A stretch of 23,402 bases of DNA from Amoeboradix gromovi X-113 (GCA_018985225.1 JADGIF010000072.1:1-23402); one strand, 5' to 3'. Positions 2,353 to 23,402 are shown, counted from the first letter of the stretch. Notes: a model not told the origin generated them from the sequence alone. Numbers and translations are program-made.

Positions 2353-2433
2353 AATTTTAGTCTCACTTTTAACTTCCCGATTTCTCGTGCTAGAATCATT
2401 CTTACAAGTCTTACTTTAGAATATCATACGTTT

Positions 2434-2600
2434 GTATTTCATTGTAGTGTTCTCCTCATTAAAAGTCTGATTTCCGAGAAAATCGGGAATTTCCACAGAG
2501 AAACTAATGCTAGTTTCTCCGTTACAGTGATCGCTCACGCTTTCACTACCCTGAGGTGGGATTGAATAAGGATGCATATACTTGATGTATACGTTCCTTG
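2434..2600 (-). ncRNA. Predicted omegaRNA (scaffold plus ~20-nt guide) of copy A; 5' limit is approximate
   Basis: Hairpins at 2575-2593, 2526-2547 and 2498-2519 are kept in copy B. Loop CCUCA (2556-2552) is complementary to terminal UGAGG (2458-2454). The sequence diverges from copy B 3 nt further on. Expression is not shown. Confidence 0.6.
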
Positions 2601-2704
2601 CTGTCATATGATCTCTATCTATCTTCAAATGACACTTTTTACAGGTTCAGGTTTCTAAATTAGTTTTCTTTAAAGTACCACACCTCGTACATGGCATCGA
2701 ATTT
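2454..2704 (-). mobile_element. Fanzor2/IS607-TnpB-like 3' fragment with right end (copy A), non-autonomous relic
   Basis: Minus-strand translation NSMPCTRCGTLKKTNLET*TCKKCHLKIDRDHMTARNVYIKY matches the TnpB/Fanzor zinc ribbon plus RuvC-III (DRDxNAARNI consensus). In-frame TGA at 2649-2647. 2451-2693 aligns to 23086-23332 with 19 mismatches and 4 gap nt. Confidence 0.9.
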
Positions 2705-2816
2705 GTTCCATGGTGCCATGTGGTCCATGTCCACTTCGAAATGACACTATGTACATGAATAGCTCTCCAAATTGGTTTTCTTTAGAGTGCCACATATTGT
2801 ACATGGCATCGAATTT
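2705..2816 (-). pseudogene. Second, divergent TnpB/Fanzor zinc-ribbon/RuvC-III fragment (copy C), tandem to copy A
   Basis: NSMPCTICGTLKKTNLESYSCT*CHFEVDMDHMAPWN; ungapped 112-bp alignment to 2593-2704 with 84/112 identity; TAG at 2749-2747. Confidence 0.85.
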
Positions 2817-3067
2817 CCGTGTTTGGACTAGCTTATCAGTCTGAGACGAATGTATGCTGTACCTGTTAATTATTTATTTAGAATTGATTTACCGTTTGCG
2901 AAAAGGAAGAATATCGTGTGTTTAAGCTATTAGAAAAATCTGGAAAAGTCTTGAAATGATACAAAAATATATACAAACTCGCGATAAATGATTTATTCAA
3001 GAAAACAATCGAGCTGCTAATATTGTGGAGGATGTGATTTTATTTGTACGGGGTAAAACTCGGTTTG

Positions 3068-3988
3068 ATGCTAATTGCTGGCAAATATCGGTTGGGAAGA
3101 AAACTCGGAAGTGGGTCCTTTGGTGAAATCTACCTCGGGACCAACGTAGTCACAGGTGAAGAAGTAGCAATAAAAATGGAAAGTGTTAGAGCCAGACATC
3201 CACAACTAGAATATGAAGCCCGAGTTTATCGTTCTTTAGCTGGTGGCGTTGGAATACCTTTTGTTCGCTGGTATGGTCAAGAAGGCGAGTACAATGCTAT
3301 GGTAATTGACCTATTAGGTCCCAGTTTGGAAGATTTGTTTAATTATTGTAATCGTAAATTTTCTCTGAAAACTGTGTTGCTCTTAGCAGATCAAATGATC
3401 AGCAGAGTTGAATATATACATTCTAAAAACTTCATTCATAGAGATATAAAGCCTGACAATTTCTTGATGGGTCTTGGTAGGCGTGCTAATTTAGTCAACT
3501 TGATTGATTTTGGTTTAGCTAAGAAGTATAGAGATCCCAGAACTCATTTGCACATTCCTTATAGAGAAAATAAAAATCTAACAGGCACTGCTCGTTATGC
3601 TTCTATTAATACCCATTTAGGGGTCGAACAAGCTCGTAGGGATGACATGGAATCTTTAGGATATATGATGATGTACTTTTGTAGAGGTTCCCTTCCTTGG
3701 CAAGGACTAAAAGCAGCCACCAAAAAACAAAAATACGACAGAATAATGGAAAAGAAGATGACCACTCCGACCGAAGTCCTTTGTCGTGGTTTTCCCAAAG
3801 AGTTCACGGTCTACTTGAATTATTGTAAAGGATTGCGATTCGATGATCGCCCTGATTATGCTTATCTGCGTAGATTATTCAGGGAATTGTTTATTAAAGA
3901 AGGGTTTAGCTATGACTACATATTCGATTGGACTATAATTAAGAATGAAAAGGATGGCCAAGTATCATCCAAGGCACAGCAAGAGTAA
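3068..3988 (+). CDS. HRR25: Casein kinase I, Hrr25/Hhp1 (CK1 delta/epsilon) type
   Basis: [78 protein letters not shown]. First ATG is at 3068; the track start at 3044 is a TTG. The last codons may change through a possible 19-nt intron at 3985-4003. Confidence 0.95.
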
Positions 3989-4130
3989 ACCCGACTAACT
4001 TAGTGAGTAAGAAAACAATAAATATTATATTCCAATTCTCTACCAGTTTTTGAGGCGACATTTTAAATAGGACTTGTGTACCATGTAAGCACATTAGCTG
4101 CGATACTATTAAAATGCCAATTTATTAATC

Positions 4131-6025
4131 TCAGTTTTTAAAAATGGAATCCAAAAATGACTTGTAGTCATATCCGCCATCAACTTGCGGCATCTTACTC
4201 TTCAAATATGCCAACGTCTGAGGTTCCAATCTTGCCAACAACAAATCGTGCTCCGTTAAGTAAGCCTTGCCATTAGCGATTCCAGCAAACGCATCTCGTA
4301 ACTGACTTGGAGAAGTACGATCTTCCATGGTAGATTTCATGTATAATGAGAACTATGTTAAATATAGAATACCTGATTAAAGTTCATGGTTTCATTACCT
4401 TGACTCAACTCCTTGAAAAGCTTCTCAGGATCTGCTACTTGCTGACCTAACCCAGTTAATCCTCCTTTAAATTCTGCAAGTGTTAACGAATTTGAGCTGT
4501 CTTTGTCAAAATGTCTAAATGTCTTATCAATCTCTTCCAACTGCTGCGGAGTTAATCCAGACATGTTCTTCTTGGCGACAATCTGGTTTTCAATAAAGCT
4601 AGCCTTCTTTTTAATAACAAGTGTCAATAACTGCACATCAAAATGTAGATCGTCTACGCTATAAACTGTATAGTCATTCTCAGTGACATTAGCAGCTAAG
4701 CACTCTCTCTCTACTTGGTCCGCTTCCTGTAATCTTAAACTGACCTGTGCCAAATGTTCAGATAACTGAGTTACATTAGATTGCTGATCTTCTAAGCTAC
4801 CATTTAAGTTAGCAATATCGTTAGAAATTCGATCGATAGATTCCACTAATGAGTGCGCTACCTTTGCAAACTTTTGTTGCAAGTTATCCTTGATTTCCTT
4901 GATCTTGCTGTTAATTGTTGATTTACGGATTTTTTCATTCTTAACTAGATCACCCCATTGAGCATCCAAATCATTAAGACTACATCCATCAGGTGGCGAA
5001 TATGCTGGCAATTCGTATGTCTGTAATTTGGTCTGGATGTTAGCTAGTAGAGTATCCAGTTCTCGCTTCTCGCTCATCCATTCACGCTTTTCATGCGATT
5101 TGAAATATTGGAATTGGTCAGAATGCTGACGAGCATCCTCATAAGTACCCGTAAATACAGCAGACTTCCAATAAGATGTCTTGGACTTGAGACTATCTGT
5201 TAACAGTAAGCATCGGCGTTCATAATCATGTTCCATGTTCCAAGCGGTGCTTAACAAATCAGCAAACTTACCAACACGACGACCGCTTACTTCAACCTTG
5301 TCCATAACACTAAAAGCGTGAAAGTATTGAGCAACGTATGTCATGACTGATTTCTCATCAGGTTTTGCTAAATCAATTATGTCCTCAGGGTCCAATAGTC
5401 TTGCAATGTTTAATTTTGTATCAGCAACGCTGAATGCCAGTTCCATGTTTGCGTGTCTGTCCTTTTTGTTAAGCGAGTTGAAATCCAATAAATCCGGACG
5501 ATGACGGTGAATCAGAGCACAAAAAGCTAAACCGTCTTGCCATGAAAATGAAAACTCTTTAATATTAACTTCAGGTTGGTATGACTGAGTTTTACGTTGG
5601 CACCATAATAGCAGACCCTCCTTGGCACTCAAACCTTCTTCTGAGATGTCTGCGATCGAGAATCTAAGAATAATTGTCCAAATTAAACCCATAACCAGCT
5701 TCTCATTACCATCCATTATGTCTTCGGCACCAATATTTGTAATCGGAACATTTCTCGACTTGATGTATGCCAAGGCCAAATTCAAATTTTCAACTTTTTG
5801 GATTCTCATCTTAGGCGTCTTGTTAAACTTACCCAACTTTTCATCTCCAATGATTTCCAATAACTCAATCAACTTCACTCCATCTGCTATGTCTACTACG
5901 AGATCGTTAATCTTCAACTTCTGCATCTGTAATTTACTGTTGACCCACTTTGTAAATGTCTTCTTTTGAACATCCTGCCATTTTCTATCCATTACTCTTG
6001 AGCTGTCTACTACATGTTGATCCAT
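4131..6025 (-). CDS. ain1: Alpha-actinin, short fungal type; join(6025..4373, 4352..4131), about 624 aa
   Basis: CH1 (QKKTFTKWVNSKL, IGAEDIMDGNEKLVMGLIWTIILRF), CH2 (SAKEGLLLWCQRKT, DGLAFCALIHRHRPDL, KPDEKSVMTYVAQYFHAF), a short spectrin-repeat rod and an EF-hand (FDKDSSNSLTLAEF). The C-terminal EF region (QLRDAF...KAYLT...YDYKSF) lies in ORF 4131-4340 and is joined by a 20-nt intron. First ATG at 6025. Confidence 0.93.
4353..4372 (-). other. 20-nt spliceosomal intron in alpha-actinin
   Basis: CAG|GTATTCTATATTTAACATAG|TTC. GT-AG ends and a TTAAC branch-like motif; removal restores the frame (MNFNQ-FSLYMKSTMED). Confidence 0.8.
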
Positions 6026-6662: not shown

Positions 6663-9600
6663 TTATTGTGATAACAACATTGCTACTCCTCCCAATATCC
6701 ACTTATTGATAACGTCCTTTGATTTCAGATTCAATGTCCATATATATGTCGGCCCACGTTGCTTTGTTTTGTAAATCGGGCAAGGATACCCGTTCATATC
6801 TGCCTTGTCAACTGTCACTGCTTTCACATGTATGACTGGCATTTGGAAGTATAATTCTTTCATTCTAGAGTCCGTTAACCCGTTCTCATACCGCGCCCCT
6901 TCCAAATACAGTCCATCCATGTAAATTCCGTCTCTAGGGCCCTGTATTATTTCCTCTCTTGTCTTCTTCAACACTTCAATGTTCAACGTCATTTTATCTA
7001 ATGGCCATTCATTTCTCCGTGCGGTTGTTTGCATTACAGCTGTTAAAAACGCCTGTGGATTAAATAGCCATGACAAATTAACACATATTGGTACGTTAAA
7101 GTCAGAAATCCAACCTTCTAGCTGTTTGTATCTATTTAACAAATCAACAAACCATAAATTTAAACTGTTTGATGATGGATAAGTCATTTTTATCCAATTC
7201 TCTGGTATTTTGTTGAGATGCAATGATTGCATCATTTGTTCCATTAGGTCAGTAGTGCTCAAGTCTCCGTTAAGTCCCAACAACAATTCTATCAGCGATC
7301 TCTTCATTTCTGTTAATATTTTTGACATTCTATCGCATTCCTGCAGACATACACTCGTAAACGGAGTTTTATCCTCTATTTTAGCACTCATGTCTCCAAA
7401 CACTTCCGGTATTAGCACGATCATCTCTTCTATCATTACACGCAACAGCTCTTCCTTACTAACTTTGCCTTGGCCTAATGATTCTTTTGGTTGTAATTCC
7501 ATCATCGTCATAAAAAGCTTTTCACTTGTTATAGTCTGTACACTAATCTCCGCATTAGGATGCATGCCATACAGTAGGGGATTCTCTAACGGCAAATTTT
7601 CATCTATGTATCTATGGTATTCATTGTAGTCTAAACTGGGTGGAGCATTAAAATTCGCGCAGTAAAGCAATGAAGTGTCAAACAGTTCTTCACGTACGTA
7701 TACCTGCAGATATGTAGCACATAGTCTGCGATCTAAATCATCACTTATATGTCCGCCATACATAATCTCTCCAAATATGTATCTGATGTCATCCCACGGA
7801 ATCTTCGAAAACGACTCCAAATAATTGAACAAGACATCTACACTTATAGTCAAGTCTCCGTTATTAAAAGGGTAGCTTCTGTTCCATCCAATAGCTCCAA
7901 ATTTCTTACGTTCTACCACCACTGCATGAAAGTAACATAACGCAAATAATATTGACTTAAATTCTAATTCTTTGCTGCACTTGTCCAATATTTCCTGATC
8001 AAAGTTGTCCAACGCCTTGTGTAAATTAGCCTTCATCCCAGTTGGTGCTTCATTTGTTATTTTGATACTCTGCTGCAAGATAGAGGTAGGTATTATGTGA
8101 TATAATGGATCACCCGCCGGCTCAGCGCTAAGAAACAATCTAAAATTAACATTTATATCCAAGCGGAATATTTCCTCCATTTTCTTTTCCAGTGTCGGTA
8201 GCCACTTTGCAACTAAATGGATGTTTTGCAGCATCACCCATCCACCTTGGACTATAGCAATATCCAAGGCTCTTTCTGCTACTATTTCTTGTCCTTGTCC
8301 AAGCGATATATTATAAAAGTTGTTTAATTCTGTTGATATACCCAAAGTTTTTCCAATCTGCTCTACATCTTTCACAGGATCTACACCAGGACTCAATATA
8401 AAAAATATTGGAATGTATGCACTGCTTTCTTGGAATGTTGCGCCAAATGGTGTTCTATTGCCATTTACATATCGGTCTCCAATTTTAGTCGAAATAAACT
8501 GCCTCAAACCATACAATATCCTATCTGGTCTTAAGGCTCTAAGTATACACAATTGCTGGATTGCTGTTCTGTTCTTCCACTCCGATGGTAACTTTTCATT
8601 CTCTGGCTGCTCTAATTCACAATATTTCTTCCATCTCTTATTACTTTGTTCCAAATCATTACAGAGTTCTTTCAAGGCATCTATCTTAGTGAGCGCCTTT
8701 AGCGTTTGCCATTGGCCATCATTGATCCATTCAATTGGACATGTTGACACTTGGCGAGGACATCTTAACAAGTAATCTAAATCCACTGCATCTATTTCTT
8801 GCTCTTTAAGCATTATGTTGAACACCAACTGGCTAACAAATATTAATTTGTCATTCTCAAACAAGCCCCGGCTAGTAGAACTAAACACTTCAAAAGTAAT
8901 GCATTCAATTAAACACTTGACTCTATCCTTTACTTCTTCGGCTGTTTCTGCTTTGCTAATGGCTCTGAAAAAGACGTTTTTAAACGATTTTAAACTATAT
9001 TGATACATTGGGTGAATTACCCACATAGAGTTTAACAGAAAGTATAACATACTACTTCGATCCGCAACAGGCCTGTATATCTCCCTTATTTCATTGATTC
9101 TGATCTCGGTTTTAAAAGCTTCCTTGACTTTGAATTCAATTTCAATAGCAGTCCTTTTAGTAGATTCCAGATTCTCTACAAGTGTGGTGTCTCCTAAAAA
9201 ATTTCCCTGAGCACTGCTCAACTTGAACAGCAAATTGTCCTCCAATTCTAGCAGTTTTATTTTAAACTCATTCTGCTGTCGAGTCAGTTCGGCCCTACTT
9301 TTTTCCAACTCACTGCGCTCAACATTAACGACATCAGCTAATAACTGATCTTCTAATCCTTGTATAGTGACTGTAAAGTTTATAATACAAGTCTGTGCTT
9401 GTACTTCTGGAGTGTAATGGGGATTAGGCAGTCTAGTTTGCAAAATCAATTTAAACTTAGAATGAATCTCAACGTCCTTGTCACCCAATAAATAGTACTT
9501 GTTTTTTTTAATCTTGTTATTGCTAATGATGTTGTCTAATATGGGGTCTAATTGTTCACTGACATCTTCTAAAATACAGGTTAATCCCTCGCTAATACAC

Positions 9601-12600
9601 TTTTCAATCTTGTCCAAATATCCCTTGCTTCCTATACTGATTAACAGTGCATCTGGTAGTTTGGACTTTAGCCAATTTATACATTGAAGCTGCGGATCTA
9701 TAAATAGACACCACCTGCTTGAATTGGTATACATTAAAGCATTCTCTATTGAGACTGGATCTCTAGGCAACCCTTCATTTTGCCATTTACTAACATCTGC
9801 GTCATTTGATAGAAACCTTATTAAATCAAAGTCATCACTAATCATGATGTCTATTGATTTCAAGTACTGCTTAAAGTTATCAAGTAGTTCTCTTCTGTAT
9901 AATTTAGTAAATGGTCCGGCAGATGCCAAAAATGCTGCACTCAACAACACATCACCAACAAGTGTGGTTTCTAATTTACTGTACATATTAATAGCTTCTC
10001 CCCATCTTAATCTTTCGCTGCTTAACCCGTTTACCAATCTATCAGCCAATCCAAGTGTTTCTTGAGTTTTTTGGGCCTCATGTTCACATTTCAGCTTCTC
10101 ACTAGTTGCTTTCTCAAACTTGTTCCTTAACTCTATCAAGTCATTGTCTAACTGCATAACTTTGCTTTTTACTTGCTGTAATTTAGTTTGGGCATGATTT
10201 AACTGATCCGAAGATTCTTTTAGCGCTATTCTTTTAGGTTCTACATCGCAGAACACATGATAGTAAATAACTATATTCACAACCCACCCACAGAGTCCTG
10301 CTGCTGCTTGACTCTTACTTTTAATAAAATCTGCTGTAAAATCAGGATTTTGTAAATAAGGCTTCAAAGCGTCCAAATTGTTTTGATTAATGTCTTCTTT
10401 GTTAAAATTGACTAGGCTATCTAGAAATCTGTCCACGTTTGCCATTGCCGCTTTGCATGCCTTCCATGATTTATCCTTTACTATTTTACCACTAGGGCTT
10501 AACAGTATAATTACAGCCGCTACGACATCTTGAACTTCTTGGGATGGCGACCCAAATGATTTTAATTCTGTCAGGTTGGATTTATTCAATGTATTTAATG
10601 CGTCACTAGCTGCCGCCAGTGCGGGCTCTGCTGCTTTTAGGTCTTGTTCGCATAACCTTTTCTTTTCTTCAACAACTATTGTGAATTCTTGAACCTTTTT
10701 CTCTTCCTCGTCGGCCAGCTTTTTTTCATAATTCACCTTTTCAGTGTTCTCCGCTACCGTTGCTATCAGCTTTTCAGCATTTTCATTCTTTATCTTTAAT
10801 TCAACCTCCTGATCTGCTAGTTTGCTCTTTAAAATGTCTACCTGTTCACTAGTTGATTTTAGTTTACTCAACCCATTCTCTAGTCTTTCTTTACCTCTAG
10901 TCAAATCTGATGATTTTCTTTCCAAAAGCAGTTTAAAGAGGTTTATGTATTCAAGAAACGATTTAGGTGTTGCATAGTTGTATCTCTTGTCTATAAGTAG
11001 ATACTTCTTATTTACCTCGTCACAGGTAGTTTGCCAATAGCACATGAACTTAGCCAACGTTTCTCTGCAGCCTACAGGTACTAATTCTATATCACTCAAA
11101 AACCTCATAGCTACACTGAACAATGCTTCTTGTGGCCATCCATGGAACCAATTTAAATAGGTGCTACTCATTAGTGCTGGAAATCTCCTGCATCTTCTTC
11201 TCAACTTGTCTCCTACAGGTGATAAACAGATTATAAGCCTTAAATTTAACTTCACATTATCAATAAACTTTGTCCAGCAATTCTCACTGTTATCAACTAA
11301 CCCCATCTGCTTGACCTCGCTTCTCATAGCATTTGTAATAGTTGATACTTCTTCGTCAGGGAACAGTTGAGGAACGTCCCCACTCGCTAAGAAGTCGTTA
11401 ATTACGATAAGCATTCTTTCATCTATCAAATGTGATTCAGTTATTAAAAACGTGATTTGTTGCTTTTTTAACCCACATTTCATAAACAACTGCGCTAAAT
11501 CCAGCTTAAAGTCTGCTATTCCATATCCCTTCTTTAGGCTGATTTGATAAATAGTTCTGCTTGCCAAGTATGAGGCCAATTTACTTAAAGATTGTTTACC
11601 GCTCCCACCGACTCCAACTAGCACGATATTACCTCTATTGAACTCCAATACTCTATTTATCCTGCAAACGTGTTTTATCGCATCCTCAAATAGCACTAGA
11701 TTCATCTGTGAGTTGATTTCATTATAATTATTAAGTCCTTCTTCTAATATTTTTCTGCTCTGTTCCACCGTTGTTTTTAAGTATTTACCTTCATTTAGTC
11801 CCTTGGCAAATTTGCTGAATAAATTTGGTTCAATCTTCTCATTAAACTCTTTGTTGATCAGTTCTGATGAAATCCTAGCATAGCTATCCACATCTTCCTT
11901 TGTCATCATTCTATCACCATATACCCTCTGGCATTCATGCTGAATCAGATTGGCAAGATCCAAGGTACTAGTCATTTCGCTGTCTGCTGCTAGTATGCCT
12001 TGAAATACGCTACTTATTTCTCTCATATTGAATATGTAATGAAATTTAACAGCTGTAGGTAGAAATGTCGTACTAATTTTTTTATGTATGCTTAACACAG
12101 CATTTACAATCTTAGGTAAGTGGACAGTAAAAGACTGGTTTATTTGACCAACACATATATTGCTGTATATCTTGTTTAAATCATCATCACTTGGTGCATT
12201 CATCACAAATATTGAAAAATGTCGCTGTAGTCTCTTTGAGATCGTGAAATTGCCACTGGTCGGATTCATTGCACATATATATTGACAATTTACAATGTCT
12301 TTTAGCTGCATCTTACTTCTATCATACCAATGATTGTAATCTAGCTGTTGTCTCAATAGCGTGTGACAGCTTACAGTCCCATATTTATCTACTTCCGGCA
12401 TGTTCAGGTCGTCTATGAAGTAGATCAGTTTTTTATTGCCCACAGGCCCATAAGTTTTTCCAACTTTCTTTTCCAATGGTTTCTCTAGTATTGGTTGTAA
12501 AGATGTCGAGTTTGTGTAATAATTAAATGGAATGTTAACAAAGTTATGAGTGTCTGTAAACTGCTGCAGTTTTTGTTTGATTAAGCAAGTTTTACCTACA

Positions 12601-15600
12601 CCTGCCATACCCACTAGAAGCGTAGGATGTCCGTTTCCTATTAAGATATCTAGAAGATAATATTGTCTAATTGTTTCTGTTATTGGTATCATGGTATCAA
12701 ATATCACGTCTTTCATTTCTGCAGTAAACATTCGCTGTTCCCAATTTACAAATCTCTTCTTCTCTTGATCATAAAAATAATCAAACACATTCATATCGGA
12801 TGCATAAACAGTGTTAAATTCTTGCTTAAACATTTTACTAAATTCTAATCTGTAATCTATTAGGGCATCCTGCATAATTGTTCCACCAAATGCCCACACA
12901 CAGCTAAACGCAAAGAATCCTTCTAAGACTTCCTTTTCAAAAGGCTTTGTTAAAAAATGGTCCAAGAATCTGAACAAAGTGTTAATCATGTTAAATGGCA
13001 ATATGTCACAGTGTTTAACTTTTTTTATAAATTCTAAACATGCTGCTACATATCTTTCAAATAATTGCGATAAAATAGCCCTCTCGTTTGCATCCTCTCT
13101 TTTTTGTATCCAGCTATTTATTATTGCATTCATGCTAACATCATTCTGACTTATGTACAATATACCTGCCCTACTAACCGTTGCTGGCGTTGCATACTTT
13201 AAATCACCAATTTCAAATATCAGCCTCATATTATCTTTTAAAGGTATTCTCTCATTACTAGCCAATGTCAACACTTTATTATCATCCATAACAGTATTCA
13301 GAGATTCAATCCACATTGGATCTATGTCCCCATCTAGCAAGATCCACTTGCTGTCGTTGTTACCATTTGAAAAGTCTCTCATCACAGTACTGAATAACCC
13401 ATCTTTCCATTCCCTGGTCGACGGATTCATGAACCCGAACAATTCATCATTTGTCACTGCTTTTGGATCTAAATCAGCAAATTGACACTTTCTATTCAAT
13501 TTATGATATGCCCTGAACAGTGTTTTCCATACTTTGGATTTTCCAGTAGCCGCGTCACCTAAAATAAATACACAGTGTCGCACCTGTAACAACTCTTCTA
13601 GCTGTACTACTTTTAATATAAAACTATCTTCTGGCTGCAAATTCAGCTCCAAAGCACTACATCTAATCTCGGTTTCCAATTTGTGATCTCTTTTTCTCAG
13701 TACTTCCAATTTTGGGAATAAATCGGCAATCAATCCCATAAATATAGGAACATCTTCCAACACTATTTTAGGAACGTTAAAATCACGCAATGCTCTCATT
13801 AGCACTTGATCTTCTGGCGTAGTATTTGGCTCACTCCGCTTTAAGCTGCCGGCTACAACTAAAACACTCTTTATTGCTCTCAATCCCCAATCATAATGAT
13901 CTTGCTTGCTGAGGAGTTCCCTATTTAGTTTATATAATGTGTTAAACTTTCGGGCTAGTAGGTTTGCACTTGTAAATCCCTCAGCCATTAGCATAATTTC
14001 CATAATTAGTTCTAAATTAGGAACAACCATGGAACACGGTCTAAACAATGCTTTTAAATTATCGGGTAGTTCGGCTCTGCCTGCATATCCCGGGTTCATG
14101 GTAATCCAAATACCAACCGTCTGTTTCAATTTAATATCTTCTCCTAAGAAGTTGAACCTCTGTTTTTTAGCTCTTAGAGCGTCCTGAATACTCTTAACCT
14201 GTGTTGCAATTACACTTAAAACCTCCACACTGATTCTGTTAAACTCATCAAAACAGCCCCAACTACCACTCTGTGCTAGACCCTTGTAAATATTACCTAC
14301 ACTTTGATAGTCCATCTGCTCTGAACAATTAAAGACATATACCATAATTGCCATTGCTTTTCCTAAATCTTTGACTGTCTCTGTTTTACCAGTTCCAGCA
14401 GGTCCTTGAGGACTTCCTCCTAACTTCAGATGCAGCGCTTGTGATAAAGTTATATAACATCTATCTGTCAATGGGGTAACCACCAATCTAGCCGTATTGC
14501 CAAGATACTCGTAATTGTATCTAAACTTCGCATCACAAATGTTTATCAAGCAGTCTTTTTCATCATCATCCCACCGAATTCTTAATTGCGACTGCCAGCT
14601 CCAACACTGCGCATTTGTTGCCTTCTCCATTATCAGTTTACTCACTACATCTCTAGCATGTACATCTAATGTGCAAATGGTCATAACAAGAGTTCTGTCA
14701 TTTTTGCTCAAAGTTCCCTGTATTAGTGTTATTAGATTGGTAAGCTGCACACACTGCTTTTTGTACAAATCCTTCATTGCCATCTCATTCCCTTCTTCCA
14801 TTTTGATAAATGCCATGTTCACTTCTGAAGTCCAGAAGAGTTGAGTTCCCGCCAACGCTAGCTGAGAGCAGTGTTCTAAAATCCATTTTTCCCTTGGCCT
14901 TTCATCGTATTGTGCTATAGCATCGTTCAATTTGTATTTCAAACACTTCTTCATTTCGTTCTCTATGTCGCATAACCAGTGCTCTACAGCTCCCTTCAAC
15001 ACCAATGGCTGTTGAAACTCGACATACTCTTTCTCTCTGCTGTACATTCCTTTAATTACACTGCAATTTTCAGTTGCATCTACGAACTCTAAATCGCATA
15101 AATTATCAAACAACTTGCTCAAGTGTGATGATACCGATCTGGGGCAATTTCCATTACTCAATATGTCTAGCAAATCGGCACTGCTAATGAAATAAAATCG
15201 TGGAAATACCAGTCTTTTTGTCTCCAAATAGTCACTCAGTGCTTTTTCGCATTTCTGTAATTCATAGTGATATCCCTCCAATTTATCTAGTAGATTAGGC
15301 GTATTGCACATATCTATTATACCCGTCTTTTCTGTAACATGGAATTCTGTCATTAATGCTATAAAGTCCTCTGAAGTATTATGAAATCTTAATGTGTCAT
15401 CGGGTAACTGCTTCTTTATATCCTCGCTCTGACTAAATATGGTCTGCAAGTGACACCATGTAGTTTGCACAGTATTCAGTATAGTTATAATGCTATCCAC
15501 AGTTCCTAGAGTATTCTGCCATTCTACTATGTCACTTTTGAAGTAATCTATATTCTTACTATTCAGTAGATTCTGCAGCATCAATTGGTTATCCTCGAGA

Positions 15601-18600
15601 CATTCTACTAGATTATCAGGCATTTTGGCAATATAAGCATTTGAACTCTTCTCAAATACAAAGTTCATCAACTGCCATTGTTGATTAACATCATTAAGTA
15701 CCTTTTGTATTGATTGCTCCTTGTTCGACTTGTCAATTATAGTGCGCACATCGTCTTCATAGTGATGTAATTGCAACAGTAGCAGATCCTGCAGTGAATT
15801 CTTGTCGCTAATTATAATATTTACCTTAGCTAGCACCATCAACTGATCCCAATGGCGCTGTTTAATAAATGGACTCTTTAATTCACCAATTATTGTTATT
15901 TGCATAGTAATGTCTTTTACGTATTTTTCTACAAATGTAAATATTGGCCATGCCTTGACATCTTTGTCCATTTTTTTCAAATCCTTTAGCAAATCCTTAC
16001 TAAATTGTTCAATATATTCTACATCTATTAACTTCCACTGCATTTTTCTATAATGCTCAAACTTGGTGAGAGTGTAGAATGTAAAATCCCACACACTCTT
16101 TAACTGCCTCAAATTGAACAGGCAAGCGTCTAGCAACTCCATCCTTGGCACTTCAATCTCTAATACACTACTTACATTAACCAGTTCCTGTTTTTCTATT
16201 AAAAGCTGCCCTATTTCCCTTTGATAGTCATTAATTTGTGAATATTTAAATTCTGCATTATATTTGTATGGTCCGTTTACCAAGAAGTCTTCTCTGAAGT
16301 TCAATACCTTTCTATGTAGCCTTTTTAATTTCGATTCGATATTCTCTATCACTTGGACTTTCAGCGGGAGAATAGTCTCATTAGTTTTAAATGCAATTTT
16401 ATTCAGGCTCGCATGAAATTCTTTCAGCTCTTTGAAATTGTTCATTACTCCATCACTTGCGATGTTATTGCCCTTTAGAACTGATATTGTATTCTCCATC
16501 TGATCAAAAAAGTGCTGCTTGGTTTTATCAAACGCCGAAATCTGATTTATTGTTCGTATCTTGTCTATCAACAGGCTGTAATTGTCTGCATTTAAATCTT
16601 GCTTTAACAATTCCATTTGCTCATTAAACTGTGATGTATACTTACTTACCAGCACATTAAAATCGCTCTCATATTGATTTAGCAACTGGCCAATAGTCTT
16701 TTTAATACAGCTGCTGATGTAGTTCTTATAATTTCTCATATCCATTTTTATCCACCCATTAATTAAAATCTCATTTCTCAGTTCCTTTATCTGTACTTGC
16801 AGTGATTGTAATTTGTCCAGTTCTTCTTGCACTTTATCGTCCTTTAAGGTTTTCTCAATCCACGATTGTCTAGATATGTTATATAGAAATTGATAAACTA
16901 CCAAGTCATGCTTAAAATCGTTACCATCTTTCTGTGTTTTATCAATATTTATCACAATCTTCGATTCTAAATCCTTCACTTCAAATGAGTTCATTATTAT
17001 ATCATAAACATTCACCTCTCCATTTTTTCGGAACAACGTTATTTGTTTTGCTGTGTTCTTTATTTGGTCTACAATAAATTGTATTAATTCATATATGCTG
17101 TTCTTTGTCTTACTTATGTTAGGCATTAACACTAGTTCGTGATTTATTACATCTACTATTACCTCTACAAATACTTGCTCGCTTGCCATTTTTGTGTTTT
17201 CCAACAAAATCTTCAACGTGCTGATAGTCCATTCTTTTATTGCAGTAATCAACAGCTCATCCAAATAGTCATGAAATATAGAATAGTCTGAATGCACTAC
17301 AACAGAATGAATGTTCTCTAATTGTGAATTAAACTTTACAAAGCTAGAGCTTATCAGCATCTCTATGTTTGAATATCGCTCTTTTATCTCTGAAACTGTT
17401 ATGCACTTTTTAACATCTTTATCTAGCAATAAATGCTGCATCCACTCTTCTGTTGTGAGTTTAATTAAGTTCATTAACTGTTGCATTAAAGAATATCTCA
17501 TAATACAGGTGTCTATGGCATTCCATAGATTATTAACTAGGTCACCGATGTCCTGATCCCAAGTCATTGTATATCTACATTCATCAACATGTTGGGCAAT
17601 TATGGTCAAATAGTCTGCTAACATATCTTGACTCATTGAATCCATCGGAAGTATGATGTTATTGTATGCATTACATGCTTTTCTAAGTATTCGAATACAA
17701 TTTTGTATGGTACTACTCTTTTTATAAAATGCTGTTACAAAATCCGGAAGCATTAATTCAAATTGTAATTGCTGTTTGTACGCTATAAACAGCCTAATCT
17801 CATGCATATTGACTATAATATCACTGTTAATGTTGATTTTTATAGCGTTTGAATAGTTATCGGTTTTGCATTCCGAAAACACTGTGCTCAAGAAAGCTTG
17901 CTTTTCAACCTGCAAGTCTAGGCTACACAGCAGCGGAACCTTTAGATTAGAACTGGTTACATCTTCCATGTCTAAATGCCATTGCTTCCAGGTTATACCA
18001 ATCTCGGTAGTAATATACTCAATCATTTTAGAACATTTATTTATGAAAACGGTGAAGTCCACATCTAATACAACATATCGAGTTACTGTCGAAGTAAGTT
18101 CTTCTAACTTGCGTTTATACTCATAAGCTTCTACAATATATCCCATTACAGGAGGAACATTGTGCAGGTTAATCTTAATAGATTTGACACAATAAAATAT
18201 TGATTGAACGGTAGAATGATACTCCTCAAAGAGCTCAATATAGAAATTGATTAGATACTCTAGCACTGCAGGTCTCTTTAAGAAAGACTCTAAAACTTCT
18301 AAAACCCTCAATTTCATCCAAATGTCACCATATTCGTCGCAGTTACGTTTAATTACACTGGCAATATCCCTATCTAGTTGGTAAATCATCTTAAAAAAGT
18401 CCAAATAATCACACGTTGAAACACCAATATCTAACAAATCGCAAGATTTCGATTTAAGTTCTTCAAAGGATTTATTATACTGAAAAAACGATTTAGTAAT
18501 AACGTCGTTATAGATTTCGTTCTTGATGCCACCTAATTCTATCTTTTCTAACTTACAATACACCGACTGTGATTCAACAACCTCCTGAATGAACTCTAGT

Positions 18601-19649
18601 CTTTTAATGAATTCGCTACAATCATAGTACATATTGCCCGAGACATCAGGAAAACATTTTAGTAAATACTCTACATACTTGAGCACTACGGATTTGAGAT
18701 ATTTTAAACTTGTCGTGGAAACATAGCAATCAAGTGACAGGTAGTCCAGACCATAAATATTTTTAAGTAACTCAACTACTTCTTTTGATACTTTTGGGAT
18801 AACAATTTCCAATAAATGCTCTTTAGAGTATTCTTGAAAAAGCGGTAGTGATTCTTTTAAAGCTTTAGGAATCATAGCAATAGCATACTCTACATCTTTG
18901 ACATCAGGCGAAGTCTCTTTTAGAATGGACAACCATTTCTCGCATGCCTTAAATCCTGAGCAGACCTCTAAAGTAGTTTGAAGCAGGTGTAACTTCTCTT
19001 CAACATTCTTTAGAGTAAATCTAAATGGGGAGAATTCAAGCAGCTTCTCGACCTGACTGAATATTGGGGAGGAATGCTTATCACGAACTTCAAAGTAGAT
19101 GGACTGAATTTCATCCCAAAAAGAAATCTCTTCACTGAGAGTTTCCCGCCTCTGATTTGAAATTCGATCCAGCAATTGCTGTAATCCCTCTTTCCAGTTC
19201 ATAATCAGTGATTCTGAGTTTCCAATAGTTTGCACTCCGAATTCTACTTCCTTGAATTCAATTTTATGCAGTGCCTGTAAAGCCGCATTTTTAATGTTTT
19301 GAGTGGTCGTAGACAATACCATCTGCTCCACATTATTACCAGATGCCATATTTAAAACGACCAAGTCGTTTAAGAATCTCGTAGGTAGACTCTCATGGTA
19401 AATAGTGTGTCCATTTAGCTTTGAGTACACGTAAATTTTCTTTTTCATGTTCAAACCTGGTAGCATGCTATCTTTTGTTATTACTAGCTCATCTTTCAGG
19501 GAAATGTACACATAAATTGTGAAGTTGTGGGTTTCTTGAAATTTACTTAAAAGGTCAGAGTTGTCCTGGATTCCTTTTCTCAGCTTGTCTTGCTTGCAGT
19601 TTACAGTTTGCAAAATCCATTCTTGGATTTGTGGCTCTGCTGTTGGCAT
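6663..19649 (-). CDS. Axonemal outer-arm dynein heavy chain, beta-type (DNAH9/11/17, Chlamydomonas ODA4 class), about 4328 aa, single ORF
   Basis: P-loops GPAGTGKT, GDAATGKS, GMAGVGKT, GVGGSGKQS; VYVFNCSEQMDY, WGCFDEFNRISVEVLSV, LLSKQDHYDWGLRAIKSVLVVAG; C-terminus CPIYKTKQRGPTYIWTLNLK typical of the DNAH9/17 class. First ATG at 19649. Confidence 0.95.
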   Translation of the reverse strand: MPTAEPQIQEWILQTVNCKQDKLRKGIQDNSDLLSKFQETHNFTIYVYISLKDELVITKDSMLPGLNMKKKIYVYSKLNGHTIYHESLPTRFLNDLVVLNMASGNNVEQMVLSTTTQNIKNAALQALHKIEFKEVEFGVQTIGNSESLIMNWKEGLQQLLDRISNQRRETLSEEISFWDEIQSIYFEVRDKHSSPIFSQVEKLLEFSPFRFTLKNVEEKLHLLQTTLEVCSGFKACEKWLSILKETSPDVKDVEYAIAMIPKALKESLPLFQEYSKEHLLEIVIPKVSKEVVELLKNIYGLDYLSLDCYVSTTSLKYLKSVVLKYVEYLLKCFPDVSGNMYYDCSEFIKRLEFIQEVVESQSVYCKLEKIELGGIKNEIYNDVITKSFFQYNKSFEELKSKSCDLLDIGVSTCDYLDFFKMIYQLDRDIASVIKRNCDEYGDIWMKLRVLEVLESFLKRPAVLEYLINFYIELFEEYHSTVQSIFYCVKSIKINLHNVPPVMGYIVEAYEYKRKLEELTSTVTRYVVLDVDFTVFINKCSKMIEYITTEIGITWKQWHLDMEDVTSSNLKVPLLCSLDLQVEKQAFLSTVFSECKTDNYSNAIKININSDIIVNMHEIRLFIAYKQQLQFELMLPDFVTAFYKKSSTIQNCIRILRKACNAYNNIILPMDSMSQDMLADYLTIIAQHVDECRYTMTWDQDIGDLVNNLWNAIDTCIMRYSLMQQLMNLIKLTTEEWMQHLLLDKDVKKCITVSEIKERYSNIEMLISSSFVKFNSQLENIHSVVVHSDYSIFHDYLDELLITAIKEWTISTLKILLENTKMASEQVFVEVIVDVINHELVLMPNISKTKNSIYELIQFIVDQIKNTAKQITLFRKNGEVNVYDIIMNSFEVKDLESKIVINIDKTQKDGNDFKHDLVVYQFLYNISRQSWIEKTLKDDKVQEELDKLQSLQVQIKELRNEILINGWIKMDMRNYKNYISSCIKKTIGQLLNQYESDFNVLVSKYTSQFNEQMELLKQDLNADNYSLLIDKIRTINQISAFDKTKQHFFDQMENTISVLKGNNIASDGVMNNFKELKEFHASLNKIAFKTNETILPLKVQVIENIESKLKRLHRKVLNFREDFLVNGPYKYNAEFKYSQINDYQREIGQLLIEKQELVNVSSVLEIEVPRMELLDACLFNLRQLKSVWDFTFYTLTKFEHYRKMQWKLIDVEYIEQFSKDLLKDLKKMDKDVKAWPIFTFVEKYVKDITMQITIIGELKSPFIKQRHWDQLMVLAKVNIIISDKNSLQDLLLLQLHHYEDDVRTIIDKSNKEQSIQKVLNDVNQQWQLMNFVFEKSSNAYIAKMPDNLVECLEDNQLMLQNLLNSKNIDYFKSDIVEWQNTLGTVDSIITILNTVQTTWCHLQTIFSQSEDIKKQLPDDTLRFHNTSEDFIALMTEFHVTEKTGIIDMCNTPNLLDKLEGYHYELQKCEKALSDYLETKRLVFPRFYFISSADLLDILSNGNCPRSVSSHLSKLFDNLCDLEFVDATENCSVIKGMYSREKEYVEFQQPLVLKGAVEHWLCDIENEMKKCLKYKLNDAIAQYDERPREKWILEHCSQLALAGTQLFWTSEVNMAFIKMEEGNEMAMKDLYKKQCVQLTNLITLIQGTLSKNDRTLVMTICTLDVHARDVVSKLIMEKATNAQCWSWQSQLRIRWDDDEKDCLINICDAKFRYNYEYLGNTARLVVTPLTDRCYITLSQALHLKLGGSPQGPAGTGKTETVKDLGKAMAIMVYVFNCSEQMDYQSVGNIYKGLAQSGSWGCFDEFNRISVEVLSVIATQVKSIQDALRAKKQRFNFLGEDIKLKQTVGIWITMNPGYAGRAELPDNLKALFRPCSMVVPNLELIMEIMLMAEGFTSANLLARKFNTLYKLNRELLSKQDHYDWGLRAIKSVLVVAGSLKRSEPNTTPEDQVLMRALRDFNVPKIVLEDVPIFMGLIADLFPKLEVLRKRDHKLETEIRCSALELNLQPEDSFILKVVQLEELLQVRHCVFILGDAATGKSKVWKTLFRAYHKLNRKCQFADLDPKAVTNDELFGFMNPSTREWKDGLFSTVMRDFSNGNNDSKWILLDGDIDPMWIESLNTVMDDNKVLTLASNERIPLKDNMRLIFEIGDLKYATPATVSRAGILYISQNDVSMNAIINSWIQKREDANERAILSQLFERYVAACLEFIKKVKHCDILPFNMINTLFRFLDHFLTKPFEKEVLEGFFAFSCVWAFGGTIMQDALIDYRLEFSKMFKQEFNTVYASDMNVFDYFYDQEKKRFVNWEQRMFTAEMKDVIFDTMIPITETIRQYYLLDILIGNGHPTLLVGMAGVGKTCLIKQKLQQFTDTHNFVNIPFNYYTNSTSLQPILEKPLEKKVGKTYGPVGNKKLIYFIDDLNMPEVDKYGTVSCHTLLRQQLDYNHWYDRSKMQLKDIVNCQYICAMNPTSGNFTISKRLQRHFSIFVMNAPSDDDLNKIYSNICVGQINQSFTVHLPKIVNAVLSIHKKISTTFLPTAVKFHYIFNMREISSVFQGILAADSEMTSTLDLANLIQHECQRVYGDRMMTKEDVDSYARISSELINKEFNEKIEPNLFSKFAKGLNEGKYLKTTVEQSRKILEEGLNNYNEINSQMNLVLFEDAIKHVCRINRVLEFNRGNIVLVGVGGSGKQSLSKLASYLASRTIYQISLKKGYGIADFKLDLAQLFMKCGLKKQQITFLITESHLIDERMLIVINDFLASGDVPQLFPDEEVSTITNAMRSEVKQMGLVDNSENCWTKFIDNVKLNLRLIICLSPVGDKLRRRCRRFPALMSSTYLNWFHGWPQEALFSVAMRFLSDIELVPVGCRETLAKFMCYWQTTCDEVNKKYLLIDKRYNYATPKSFLEYINLFKLLLERKSSDLTRGKERLENGLSKLKSTSEQVDILKSKLADQEVELKIKNENAEKLIATVAENTEKVNYEKKLADEEEKKVQEFTIVVEEKKRLCEQDLKAAEPALAAASDALNTLNKSNLTELKSFGSPSQEVQDVVAAVIILLSPSGKIVKDKSWKACKAAMANVDRFLDSLVNFNKEDINQNNLDALKPYLQNPDFTADFIKSKSQAAAGLCGWVVNIVIYYHVFCDVEPKRIALKESSDQLNHAQTKLQQVKSKVMQLDNDLIELRNKFEKATSEKLKCEHEAQKTQETLGLADRLVNGLSSERLRWGEAINMYSKLETTLVGDVLLSAAFLASAGPFTKLYRRELLDNFKQYLKSIDIMISDDFDLIRFLSNDADVSKWQNEGLPRDPVSIENALMYTNSSRWCLFIDPQLQCINWLKSKLPDALLISIGSKGYLDKIEKCISEGLTCILEDVSEQLDPILDNIISNNKIKKNKYYLLGDKDVEIHSKFKLILQTRLPNPHYTPEVQAQTCIINFTVTIQGLEDQLLADVVNVERSELEKSRAELTRQQNEFKIKLLELEDNLLFKLSSAQGNFLGDTTLVENLESTKRTAIEIEFKVKEAFKTEIRINEIREIYRPVADRSSMLYFLLNSMWVIHPMYQYSLKSFKNVFFRAISKAETAEEVKDRVKCLIECITFEVFSSTSRGLFENDKLIFVSQLVFNIMLKEQEIDAVDLDYLLRCPRQVSTCPIEWINDGQWQTLKALTKIDALKELCNDLEQSNKRWKKYCELEQPENEKLPSEWKNRTAIQQLCILRALRPDRILYGLRQFISTKIGDRYVNGNRTPFGATFQESSAYIPIFFILSPGVDPVKDVEQIGKTLGISTELNNFYNISLGQGQEIVAERALDIAIVQGGWVMLQNIHLVAKWLPTLEKKMEEIFRLDINVNFRLFLSAEPAGDPLYHIIPTSILQQSIKITNEAPTGMKANLHKALDNFDQEILDKCSKELEFKSILFALCYFHAVVVERKKFGAIGWNRSYPFNNGDLTISVDVLFNYLESFSKIPWDDIRYIFGEIMYGGHISDDLDRRLCATYLQVYVREELFDTSLLYCANFNAPPSLDYNEYHRYIDENLPLENPLLYGMHPNAEISVQTITSEKLFMTMMELQPKESLGQGKVSKEELLRVMIEEMIVLIPEVFGDMSAKIEDKTPFTSVCLQECDRMSKILTEMKRSLIELLLGLNGDLSTTDLMEQMMQSLHLNKIPENWIKMTYPSSNSLNLWFVDLLNRYKQLEGWISDFNVPICVNLSWLFNPQAFLTAVMQTTARRNEWPLDKMTLNIEVLKKTREEIIQGPRDGIYMDGLYLEGARYENGLTDSRMKELYFQMPVIHVKAVTVDKADMNGYPCPIYKTKQRGPTYIWTLNLKSKDVINKWILGGVAMLLSQ

Positions 19650-19773
19650 TTTGACCTTTAGCACGAAACACTTGAATTCAGGATATTTATAGTAAAATCC
19701 TTAAACTGTGACAATGGTGGCAAACAATGTCGTATTACCTCTATTAAACTAAATGTATTTACTTCAATTACTT

Positions 19774-20736: not shown

Positions 20737-20791
20737 TGTTGGTTACAAGGGCCAAAAAATAATTTTAATTTTACTGTAAGTGATTTATTAT

Positions 20792-21133: not shown

Positions 21134-21325
21134 TCCCCCACACTTGCCGACTTGAAACTAAACTATCACTAAATAATGGTTTACACAGCATGCAATCTCC
21201 ACATTGTCTTTGGCCATGCGAGTGTAACCACATCAATGAGGCTTATAATCTAGAAATGGGACAGATCAGGTGATTGTTAGTAATTGTAAAGTGGAAACCC
21301 AGGAGCACTCGATATTTTATACAAT

Positions 21326-22744
21326 TTATTGGTTTTCATAACTATATTCATATATATGCTGATCTTCCGCACCCTCATTTATATCACTATCTTCCACGTA
21401 TTCAACTATTTCCTCATCAGTGCTTTTGTCATCAAACATCTTGAAATCATGCAGTGATGAAGATCTAGCCGGTGGATAGTCTGTCAAACTTCCTTGACTC
21501 TTCATTATCGTAGGAATCACTGCTCCTAGTAACGGTGTCCGTGTATCTTTCTTTACTGCTATTCTGGTCCATTTCCTTTTTCTGGAGACGTGTTTTTCAG
21601 GCAAAGTAGGGTTGAACTCATCATCGCAAAGGCACCATCCTTCGTCGTCTACTTTGTTCCATTGACTATCTATATGCCACTCGTTTAAAAACTCATATCC
21701 TGGCGGGGTTTTATAATCTCCTGGGGCCGGGAATGGAATTGTTCCCTGAATATCCGAGTACGGCGGGGGATCATTACCAAGGCATGTAGCAACATATATG
21801 CCCTCTATTAATCTTTGGTTTTCAAATATGGTCAAATTAGCTGTGTTTGTAACTTGACTGGAGAAAGTAGCTGGAGCACTTGACGATGTGTCAGGTGATG
21901 ACAGAACCGGATGATTTGTGCTTGACATAGAAGTAGCAGTTGTATCACCAGGTAGCCCATCAGACCTAATATCAATGTTTGAAATCCTTCGTTTAGCTTT
22001 TACAGCAGGTTGTATTATATCCTTGATAATCGGGGAAATCTCATGAATATGATCTTTTAGAGGTGAATTAATCAAGAACAAACTCCAGCCAACAATCAAG
22101 CAAATAATATTAAAAGGAAAAAACAAATATACTATAATTACGATAGGAATGCAAGCAATGCTAAATTGAATTACTTTCATAGTATGCTCTTCATTTCTCC
22201 ACGCTAAATGCTCATGATACTGAATGACAACGCTATCTATTGCTGCAGAAGCGTTAAACATTAAGTTTTGGATAAATTGGAGGTTCAGTTTGTACTCTTG
22301 GTGGGAGGTTTTTGGAGGAACCAAATAAGTGTGCTGTGGCTTCATTCCCGATAAACGGGGATGAGATACTATAGAGATGAATATGACAGCAAGATTCGGT
22401 AGCAAGAAAAGCAAAATGGGATACAGACATAGCAGAGTGAATATCAACAGGCAAATAATGGAGATTGTTGGATCACTCCACAACAAGATGTTCAGAAGCA
22501 TTTGCTCAGTACTTCTTAAAAAGCCAATTCTCAATAAAAACTTGTGCATATTCTTTGTTGTTCTCATCATATTTAACGGTTTAGCAACTGCCTCGATACA
22601 CGGCAATATTGGCTGGCATTGATGATGCAAACTGATTTTGCAATCTACACATTCTCTACCTTGCTTAACGACACCCCATATGAACTTGTGACAGGCATCA
22701 CAGAATGTAGGTTGATGAAAGGTTGCGGTTTGTAGACTGTGCAT
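21326..22744 (-). CDS. Pex23/Pex28-32-family ER membrane protein with N-terminal C1 zinc finger and C-terminal dysferlin domain
   Basis: C1 pattern HSLQ..FHQPTFCDACHKFIWGVVKQGRECVDCKISLHHQC...PC; LLWSDP plus hydrophobic hairpins; NLQFIQNLM; DysF motifs TIFENQR, PPGYEF..EWHID, VDDEGW, RKRKWTR. Confidence 0.8.
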   Translation of the reverse strand: MHSLQTATFHQPTFCDACHKFIWGVVKQGRECVDCKISLHHQCQPILPCIEAVAKPLNMMRTTKNMHKFLLRIGFLRSTEQMLLNILLWSDPTISIICLLIFTLLCLYPILLFLLPNLAVIFISIVSHPRLSGMKPQHTYLVPPKTSHQEYKLNLQFIQNLMFNASAAIDSVVIQYHEHLAWRNEEHTMKVIQFSIACIPIVIIVYLFFPFNIICLIVGWSLFLINSPLKDHIHEISPIIKDIIQPAVKAKRRISNIDIRSDGLPGDTTATSMSSTNHPVLSSPDTSSSAPATFSSQVTNTANLTIFENQRLIEGIYVATCLGNDPPPYSDIQGTIPFPAPGDYKTPPGYEFLNEWHIDSQWNKVDDEGWCLCDDEFNPTLPEKHVSRKRKWTRIAVKKDTRTPLLGAVIPTIMKSQGSLTDYPPARSSSLHDFKMFDDKSTDEEIVEYVEDSDINEGAEDQHIYEYSYENQ

Positions 22745-22850
22745 CGTGGTTTCGATGCCACTCCTAGTAAATGCGACACACTACAAAACTAGACAAACTT
22801 TTAAAACAAATGTGTCAAAGACAGAATTAGCCAGGTACTAGTGTCAAATG

Positions 22851-23077
22851 TTATGTCACCTCTGCTTTAGAACATAATTCTCTGTAACTGATTACTCCTC
22901 GTTGCCAATCAAGCGTAACGTTACTCCATAGACTATCAATGCATAGAATACTAATTTTAACCGGTATTCATATCTCGATCTAAAGGTCGATCCACAGCTA
23001 TTTTAGTCCGCCACATTGAGCAAACCATGTACCTCAATGAGATCTCTAAAAGCCATTTTAATTGCAATTACTATCAT
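22851..23077 (-). pseudogene. Heavily degraded Fanzor1-like C-terminal relic
   Basis: With several single-base frameshifts it reads FRDLIE-VHGLL(23032-23018)-xCGGL-NSCGSTF-DRDMNTG*N(22980-22954)...LR-x-DWQRG(from 22910). The motif order matches my recollection of the Fanzor1 pattern VHGLLxC..C..NRDxNAAxNI...RP. Confidence 0.55.
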
Positions 23078-23240
23078 GACAGCTGTCTCCTCGTCAAAAG
23101 TCCTGATTTCTTAGAAAATCAAGAATTTCCACAGAGAAACTAGCAATGCTAGATTCTCCGTTACAATGATCGCTCACGCTTTCACTACCCTGAGGCGGGA
23201 TTGAATAAGGATGCATATACTTGATGTATATGTTCCTTGC
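23069..23240 (-). ncRNA. Predicted omegaRNA (scaffold plus ~20-nt guide) of copy B; 5' limit is approximate
   Basis: Same hairpins as copy A (23214-23232, 23134-23158, terminal CUUGAUUUU-CUAA-GAAAUCAGG). Loop CCUC pairs with terminal GAGG (23092-23089), followed by a unique flank. Confidence 0.6.
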
Positions 23241-23402
23241 AGCCATATGGTCTCTATCTATTTCCAAATGACAATTTGTACAGGTTCAGGTTTCTAAATT
23301 GGTTTTCTTTAAAGTACCATACCTCGTACATGTCTGACTAGTAAATGATTCATTGCATTCGACCATCGTCTTTCCTCTTTGCTTACACTTGAACTTCAAG
23401 CG
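23089..23402 (-). mobile_element. Fanzor2/IS607-TnpB-like gene 3' end with right end (copy B), continues beyond the window
   Basis: One frame from 23402 to 23094: RLKFKCKQRGKTMVECNESFTSQTCTRYGTLKKTNLET*TCTNCHLEIDRDHMAARNIYIKY...NQDF*. This is the TnpB L.YK...G..V...E.YTS.TC..CG...C..C....DRD..AARNI pattern. Lesions: Cys to Tyr (23321-23319) and TGA (23288-23286). Confidence 0.93.

What the first reader, a model, noticed from the sequence alone, without database searches (positions are those of the whole stretch)
2434..23402. Unannotated Fanzor/TnpB (OMEGA) family: two copies with a shared scaffold and different putative guides
Seen: 2451-2693 and 23086-23332 are ~91% identical, 20.6 kb apart and in the same orientation. 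On the minus strand they encode a TnpB/Fanzor zinc ribbon and RuvC-III (DRDHMAARNI), and homology stops abruptly just after the stop codon (TGA in B, aligned TAA in A). Flanks after the predicted end ...GAGG are AGAACACTACAATGAAATAC (A) and AGACAGCTGTCATGATAGTA (B). Known: TnpB/Fanzor omegaRNAs overlap the gene 3' end and element right end and take their guide from flanking DNA; non-autonomous omegaRNA-only copies are described for Fanzors. Inference: the E-S-F-T-S-Q-T-C and DRD motifs and the GG end favour a Fanzor2/IS607-derived clade, and these loci could supply guides in trans to an intact nuclease elsewhere in the genome.
Basis: partly seen in the sequence, partly recalled or inferred. 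Interest (0 to 1): 0.92.

Follow-up and report, generated by a model that had tools for sequence, protein, structure and literature searches.

The report
Decayed miniature IS607-Fanzor2 transposon copies
The two repeats are dead, cut-down copies of a bacterial-style jumping gene that once carried an RNA-guided DNA-cutting enzyme (Fanzor2); more than 500 such copies litter this small fungal genome, a known kind of element at unusually high density, with no sign that their 'guides' still work.

Summary
The repeat is real (247 nt, 90.7%), but it is not a two-copy family. It is one of at least 536 right ends in a 10.55-Mb genome identified through EukProt as the sanchytrid fungus Amoeboradix gromovi. 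Each copy is a 450-620 bp internal-deletion derivative of an IS607 element: left end, N-terminal HTH of the serine recombinase TnpA, fused to the Fanzor2 C-terminus and right end. Copy A is complete (2452-3013). Three intact metagenomic relatives share the AGGAG end and a co-varying pseudoknot; two keep a full TnpA. Both window copies have a stop in the zinc ribbon. Across copies the ORF (private dN/dS 0.97) and the RNA stems decay neutrally. No intact cognate nuclease was found; the one open Fanzor2 ORF belongs to another family with different ends. No RNA data exist. Ancestry is confirmed; guide supply in trans is unsupported. The scan noted this family on other contigs of the genome before.

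The parts
2452..3013 (-). Copy A: complete 562-bp non-autonomous IS607-Fanzor2 element
   Evidence: ends fixed from 55 left and 70 right ends; loose read ends at 3016-3018 and near 2467
3014..3018 (-). Target motif AGCAG left of copy A (family: W-R-C-A-G); predicted AG crossover core and CAG TAM
   Evidence: logo; A/G at -4 splits about evenly in both left-end subtypes; no empty site seen
2826..2885 (-). Degenerate N-terminal HTH of IS607 TnpA (approximate limits)
   Evidence: profile of 54 natural TnpA heads hits 11 of 50 elements, sense strand only, best E 2e-10; position in copy A by homology to those copies
2593..2816 (-). 112-nt tandem duplication of the zinc-ribbon segment (2593-2704 and 2705-2816, 77% alike), marks one subfamily
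2459..2693 (-). Fanzor2 C-terminal remnant in A (zinc ribbon with TGA at 2647-2649, RuvC-III DRD; catalytic Glu motif lost)
2452..2580 (-). Predicted omegaRNA scaffold of A (5' end unknown); pseudoknot hairpin at 2549-2560 pairing with GAGG before the terminal AG
   Evidence: fold z -4.0; pairs counted; covariation
2432..2451 (-). Right flank of A = would-be guide (starts AACACTAC)
   Evidence: expression not tested
23087..23402 (-). Copy B: right part of a second element, cut by the contig end
23094..23402 (-). Fanzor2 C-terminal remnant in B: shifted Glu motif ESFTSQTC, zinc ribbon with TGA at 23286-23288, DRD, stop at 23094-23096
23087..23219 (-). Predicted omegaRNA scaffold of B; pseudoknot hairpin at 23188-23199
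   Evidence: fold z -3.65 on the minus strand, -1.33 on the plus strand
23067..23086 (-). Right flank of B = would-be guide (starts ACAGCTGT)
   Evidence: expression not tested

Best explanation
Both repeats are non-autonomous miniatures of an IS607 transposon that encoded a serine recombinase (TnpA) and a Fanzor2 nuclease. Internal deletions fused the TnpA head to the Fanzor2 tail and kept both ends (shown). The minis were most likely spread in trans by the parent's TnpA, which excises a circle and recombines its AG core with a genomic (A/G)CAG site without TIR or TSD (inferred from IS607 biochemistry). While the parent was intact, each copy's right-end transcript plus about 15-20 nt of flank could have guided Fanzor2 to the empty site (CAG + flank) and spared the filled site (GAG + flank), helping the copy persist (inferred). 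Today the sampled copies decay neutrally and no intact cognate nuclease is visible, so they are best read as fossils.
For: 536 right-end matches, control 0; 740 and 541 candidates for the two ends; 150 of 150 scored PF07282 hits over cut-off. Sharp ends, no TIR or TSD. TnpA head on the sense strand. Longer relics carry DPG and an inverted TnpA piece. Sister L086 (99/95 support) has a full IS607 TnpA (NF033518 172.8 bits), a 584-aa Fanzor2, a CAG|CT left junction at two different flanks and a GAGGAG end. Neutral decay: paired vs unpaired substitution 0.037 vs 0.034, p 0.63; 39 of 110 mutated pairs keep pairing, 35% expected; private dN/dS 0.97, 10 of 25 frames open; no pair of 50 elements above 95.3%. 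Only four loci keep the family's RuvC-I DNA; the two I could read have stops or frameshifts, and the protein searches split C977 over several frames and leave C477 at a contig edge.
Against: The assembly is a fragmented single-cell assembly filtered for bacterial-looking contigs (PMC8371127), so young near-identical copies or an intact parent may be collapsed or removed; many right ends lie near contig ends. 16 of 56 copies still keep all 28 predicted pairs and 46 keep the pseudoknot. No empty site and no circle junction were seen, so CAG as target rather than element terminus is inferred.
Confidence: 0.85

Rival explanations
1. The family is still active: an intact cognate element is hidden by the assembly, and some minis are expressed as omegaRNAs that guide it to their empty sites (ordinary selfish homing, as for Fanzor1 ghost loci).
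For: Fragmented, decontaminated assembly; copy B and many others sit at contig ends; scaffold folds well on the sense strand; ghost omegaRNAs of SpuFz1 work with the nuclease (PMC10432273).
Against: No near-identical pair among 50 elements; best genomic match to A is 94%; no intact cognate ORF; no circle junction or empty allele.
Confidence: 0.1
2. The copies were co-opted as a guide library for the open Fanzor2 ORF on contig C542 (host defence or regulation).
For: C542 holds an uninterrupted 671-aa Fanzor2 ORF with DPG, shifted Glu and DRD in the same wider clade (100/98), with a similar hairpin in the same place.
Against: Its ends share no DNA similarity with this family, its RuvC half is about 45-49% identical to the family's relic, its predicted scaffold is about half as long, its zinc finger is CxC, its TnpA has an in-frame stop in the HTH; no selection on the scaffolds; no CAG-plus-guide target away from a donor copy in 273 kb held.
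Confidence: 0.04
3. The repeat is an unrelated host repeat or a contaminating bacterial IS.
For: IS607-TnpB is mainly prokaryotic.
Against: Copies lie between eukaryotic genes (amino-acid transporter, casein kinase 1, alpha-actinin-like, dynein) on hundreds of contigs; read contigs join element and flanks; TnpA and nuclease homology are both significant.
Confidence: 0.01

Closest known systems
Fanzor2 in eukaryotic IS607 elements (IS607EU; ISvMimi/ApmFz2, PDB 9B0L; PMC3627910, PMC10711439, PMC11832414)
   Same: tnpA-Fanzor2 layout, DPG and shifted Glu, no TIR or TSD, scaffold overlapping the gene end with a terminal pseudoknot; 9B0L is the best PDB hit of the sister protein (E 4e-23).
   Different: AG core and predicted CAG TAM instead of GG/GGG; scaffold about 115-130 nt overlapping the ORF rather than about 205 nt after it; here almost all copies are miniatures, at 500+ copies.
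Fanzor1 ghost loci of Spizellomyces punctatus (PMC10432273)
   Same: About 550-nt copies that keep ends and omegaRNA region but no nuclease, in a zoosporic fungus.
   Different: Those are TIR elements with 134 ghost loci and 19 full-length genes, and the ghost RNAs were shown to work; here the mover is a serine recombinase, no cognate gene is intact, and no function is shown.
Bacterial IS607 TnpB (ISXfa1, CboIStron, ISFba1; PMC10711439, 10.1101/2023.11.20.567912, PMC11061315)
   Same: Matching core dinucleotide at both junctions; left motif differs from the right end by one base, as GGG vs CGG in ISXfa1; ISFba1-type TAM AGGAG shows AG-ending motifs exist in IS607.
   Different: Here AGGAG is the right end and the left motif is (A/G)CAG; no Rfam family matches the scaffold.

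Membership tests
Fanzor2 / eukaryotic IS607 | RuvC-I DPG motif | tested here: met
   Deleted in the window copies; present in longer relics of the same family L050 and L061
Fanzor2 / eukaryotic IS607 | RuvC-II Glu shifted to six residues before the zinc finger | tested here: met
   ESFTSQTC in copy B and relics; invariant Glu column; lost in copy A
Fanzor2 / eukaryotic IS607 | C4 zinc ribbon followed by RuvC-III RD | tested here: met
   PF07282 over cut-off on copy B; broken by TGA in both copies
Fanzor2 / eukaryotic IS607 | IS607 serine recombinase TnpA upstream of and overlapping the nuclease | tested here: met
   TnpA HTH in the left end of 11 of 50 minis; inverted TnpA piece in L050; full TnpA in sister L086
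Fanzor2 / eukaryotic IS607 | No TIR, no TSD, matching core dinucleotide at both junctions | tested here: met
   AG at both junctions of 50 complete elements, no duplication
Fanzor2 / eukaryotic IS607 | GG core (typical of most members, not universal: AG-ending TAMs are reported in PMC11061315) | tested here: not met
   Core is AG; treated as a variable trait, not a defining one
Fanzor2 / eukaryotic IS607 | omegaRNA pseudoknot between a hairpin loop and the bases before the guide | tested here: met
   Loop CCUC with GAGG here and in L086; loop CCUA with UAGG in L079 and L080. Prediction only
Fanzor2 / eukaryotic IS607 | TAM equals the insertion motif | tested here: inconclusive
   (A/G)CAG is inferred from flanks; no empty site found
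Fanzor2 / eukaryotic IS607 | Expressed RNA crossing the right end; RNA-guided cleavage | not testable with these tools
   Only one DNA run holds the stretch
Functional ghost omegaRNA loci | Ends and scaffold kept without a nuclease ORF | tested here: met
Functional ghost omegaRNA loci | Intact cognate nuclease in the same genome | tested here: not met
   limited by the fragmented assembly and by loci I could not fetch
Fanzor1 | TIR/TSD or Helitron host element and no pseudoknot | tested here: not met
   No TIR or TSD, TnpA head present, pseudoknot predicted

The most novel reading that the evidence does not exclude
Hundreds of miniature IS607 loci are still transcribed and form a genome-wide, flank-derived guide library that is loaded on an intact Fanzor2 (unassembled cognate or the C542 protein) and used by the fungus for something beyond the element's own upkeep.
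Probability: 0.05. Interest if true: 0.8.

Novelty: new member of a known kind. Interest (0 to 1): 0.33.

Why it matters
It shows that a serine-recombinase (IS607) transposon can throw off MITE-like miniatures and reach about one copy per 20 kb (roughly 3% of the DNA, inferred from 536 x about 570 bp) in the nuclear genome of a highly reduced fungus. I found no paper on Fanzors in Amoeboradix. The many flanks give a clean prediction for a small Fanzor2 clade: AG core, CAG TAM, compact pseudoknotted scaffold, testable with natural intact relatives. It does not reveal a new mechanism, and guide function is unproven.

Tried and rejected
Empty-site search by joining flanks of 50 elements inside a script against held loci: none. 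Circle or tandem junction pattern in the genome: none. Read contigs laid on 1700-3800: no joint that skips the element. RNA runs: none. Rfam: no match. RNAalifold on 59 rows collapsed because of decayed copies, so helices were taken from single folds and then counted; that count leans toward the given structure and most double changes come from the two outside relatives. IMG/VR search with P0125 gave only 22-23% hits. C542 rejected as the parent (different ends, single copy). A Fanzor1-like relic next to copy B was not confirmed by profile search. No structure prediction was run. No repaired protein was built.

Full report
Context. The window is contig C1040 of a 10,549,678-bp assembly in 1319 contigs. 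Two proteins encoded in this assembly's element families are listed in EukProt as Amoeboradix gromovi (P0001 is identical to the C542 ORF; P0124 is a translated mini-element). Size and method match the single-cell genome of that sanchytrid fungus (10.5 Mb, SPAdes, contaminant filtering; PMC8371127), although the paper gives 1167 contigs. The window holds compact eukaryotic genes. Copy A lies between an amino-acid transporter-like gene and casein kinase 1; copy B lies upstream of a C1/Pex24p gene and runs off the contig.

Observation. The repeat is real: 247 columns, 90.7%, E 2e-93. The minus strand encodes a TnpB/Fanzor zinc ribbon and RuvC-III. Both copies carry an in-frame TGA in the zinc ribbon; B has Tyr for one Cys; A has lost the Glu motif, carries a 112-nt tandem duplication and has a 1-nt deletion before the stop. 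Neither can make a nuclease.

Copy number and ends. A 17-nt right-end pattern matches 536 times, reversed control 0; DNA searches gave 740 and 541 candidates for the right and left ends. Summed contig depth over the right end is about 800-1000 times the flanks (not a copy number, but the same order). Fifty complete elements are 450-621 bp. Conservation stops after GAGGAG on the right and before W-R-C-A-G on the left; there is no TIR or TSD. Copy A spans 2452-3013, preceded by AGCAG. The -4 base is A or G about equally in both left-end subtypes (12/10 and 8/9), as expected for a target preference. Whether the C of CAG is target or element cannot be settled without an empty site, and none was found.

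Parentage. A profile of 54 natural IS607 TnpA heads hits the left part of 11 of 50 minis, on the sense strand only, best E 2e-10 (this lead came from earlier scan notes). The minis are therefore TnpA-head to Fanzor-tail deletions. Longer relics (C385, C565) keep the DPG motif but have stops and frameshifts, and C385 holds an inverted TnpA piece. The closest intact relatives are metagenomic: P0123 (59%), P0125 (57%) and L086, which is sister to the family (99/95). L086 has a full IS607 TnpA and a 584-aa nuclease whose best PDB hit is mimivirus Fanzor2. L086 and L087 are the same element at two left flanks, both CAG then CT. All three relatives end in AGGAG just after the stop; the L081 contig ends exactly there.

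RNA scaffold. The last 129-133 nt fold better than shuffles on the element strand (z -4.0 and -3.65). A CCC/GGG hairpin exposes a loop complementary to the four bases before the terminal AG: CCUC with GAGG in this family and L086, CCUA with UAGG in L079 and L080. This matches the pseudoknot described for IS607 TnpB and Fanzor2. It shows that the parent had a working omegaRNA design; it does not show that the minis are expressed.

Are the copies under selection? No sign of it. Paired and unpaired positions change at the same rate (0.037 vs 0.034, p 0.63), also in copies picked by protein match, and mutated pairs keep pairing no more often than expected (39 of 110 vs 35%). In the ORF remnant private changes are neutral (dN/dS 0.97) while all changes together give 0.29, which suggests several diverged, then-functional parents gave rise to the minis (inference). 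No two of 50 elements exceed 95.3% identity, though near-identical young copies would collapse in this assembly.

Is there a nuclease to use the guides? Only four loci keep the family's RuvC-I DNA; the two that I could read are broken, C977 is split over frames and C477 is cut by a contig edge. One uninterrupted Fanzor2 ORF (671 aa, C542) exists, but its ends match nothing else, its zinc finger is CxC and its TnpA has a stop in the HTH. A third, broken family is at C392 and C689. No RNA run exists.

Mechanism. Shown: anatomy, ends, copy number, decay. Inferred from IS607 work (10.1101/2023.11.20.567912): TnpA in trans excised circles and recombined an AG core into (A/G)CAG sites; Fanzor2 guided by the flank would cut the empty site (CAG) and spare the filled one (GAG). 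Not shown: any RNA, cleavage or present activity.

Comparison and verdict. This is a non-autonomous member of the eukaryotic IS607-Fanzor2 group and works like the Fanzor1 ghost loci of Spizellomyces (134 loci), but lacks an intact cognate gene. What is unusual is the density and the AG core, where a recent review calls GG strict although AG-ending IS607 TAMs are known. Earlier scan reports reached the same reading on other contigs; they are not independent evidence. New member of a known kind; interest 0.33.

Noticed in passing
window 1-180: End of a second dispersed repeat family with terminal inverted repeats (about 15 other loci, 74-93% identical); often close to the IS607 minis.
   Followed up: partly
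window 22775-23086: Degenerate stretch between the C1/Pex24p gene and copy B; 22775-22819 matches two other loci and resembles the terminal motif of the second repeat; the minus strand has Fanzor1-like peptide fragments, not confirmed by search.
   Followed up: partly
window 6663-19664 (-): Intronless 4333-aa outer-arm dynein beta heavy chain (best PDB hits DNAH17/DNAH9), although PMC8371127 says sanchytrids lack axonemal dyneins and have a non-motile flagellum.
   Followed up: partly
L046:1473-3488 (-) (G000:C542): Only uninterrupted Fanzor2 ORF seen (671 aa, CxC zinc finger) overlapping an IS607 TnpA with an in-frame stop; single copy, next to two unknown ORFs and a metacaspase-like gene.
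   Followed up: partly
L047 and L048 (G000:C689, C392): A third, broken IS607-Fanzor family with its own short derivatives (L022, L053).
   Followed up: no
L079:405-436: The metagenomic contig with the related Fanzor P0123 (no TnpA) carries a 32-nt motif 91% identical to the terminal motif of the second repeat of this genome, hinting at a related host or a shared vector.
   Followed up: no
L038:1702-1834: One copy ends in CTAGGAG with loop CCTTAG, closer to the intact relatives than to the family majority.
   Followed up: no
L082:3001-6151: A related Fanzor2 (P0136) lies next to an NCLDV major capsid gene, consistent with giant viruses carrying this clade.
   Followed up: no
   Followed up: no
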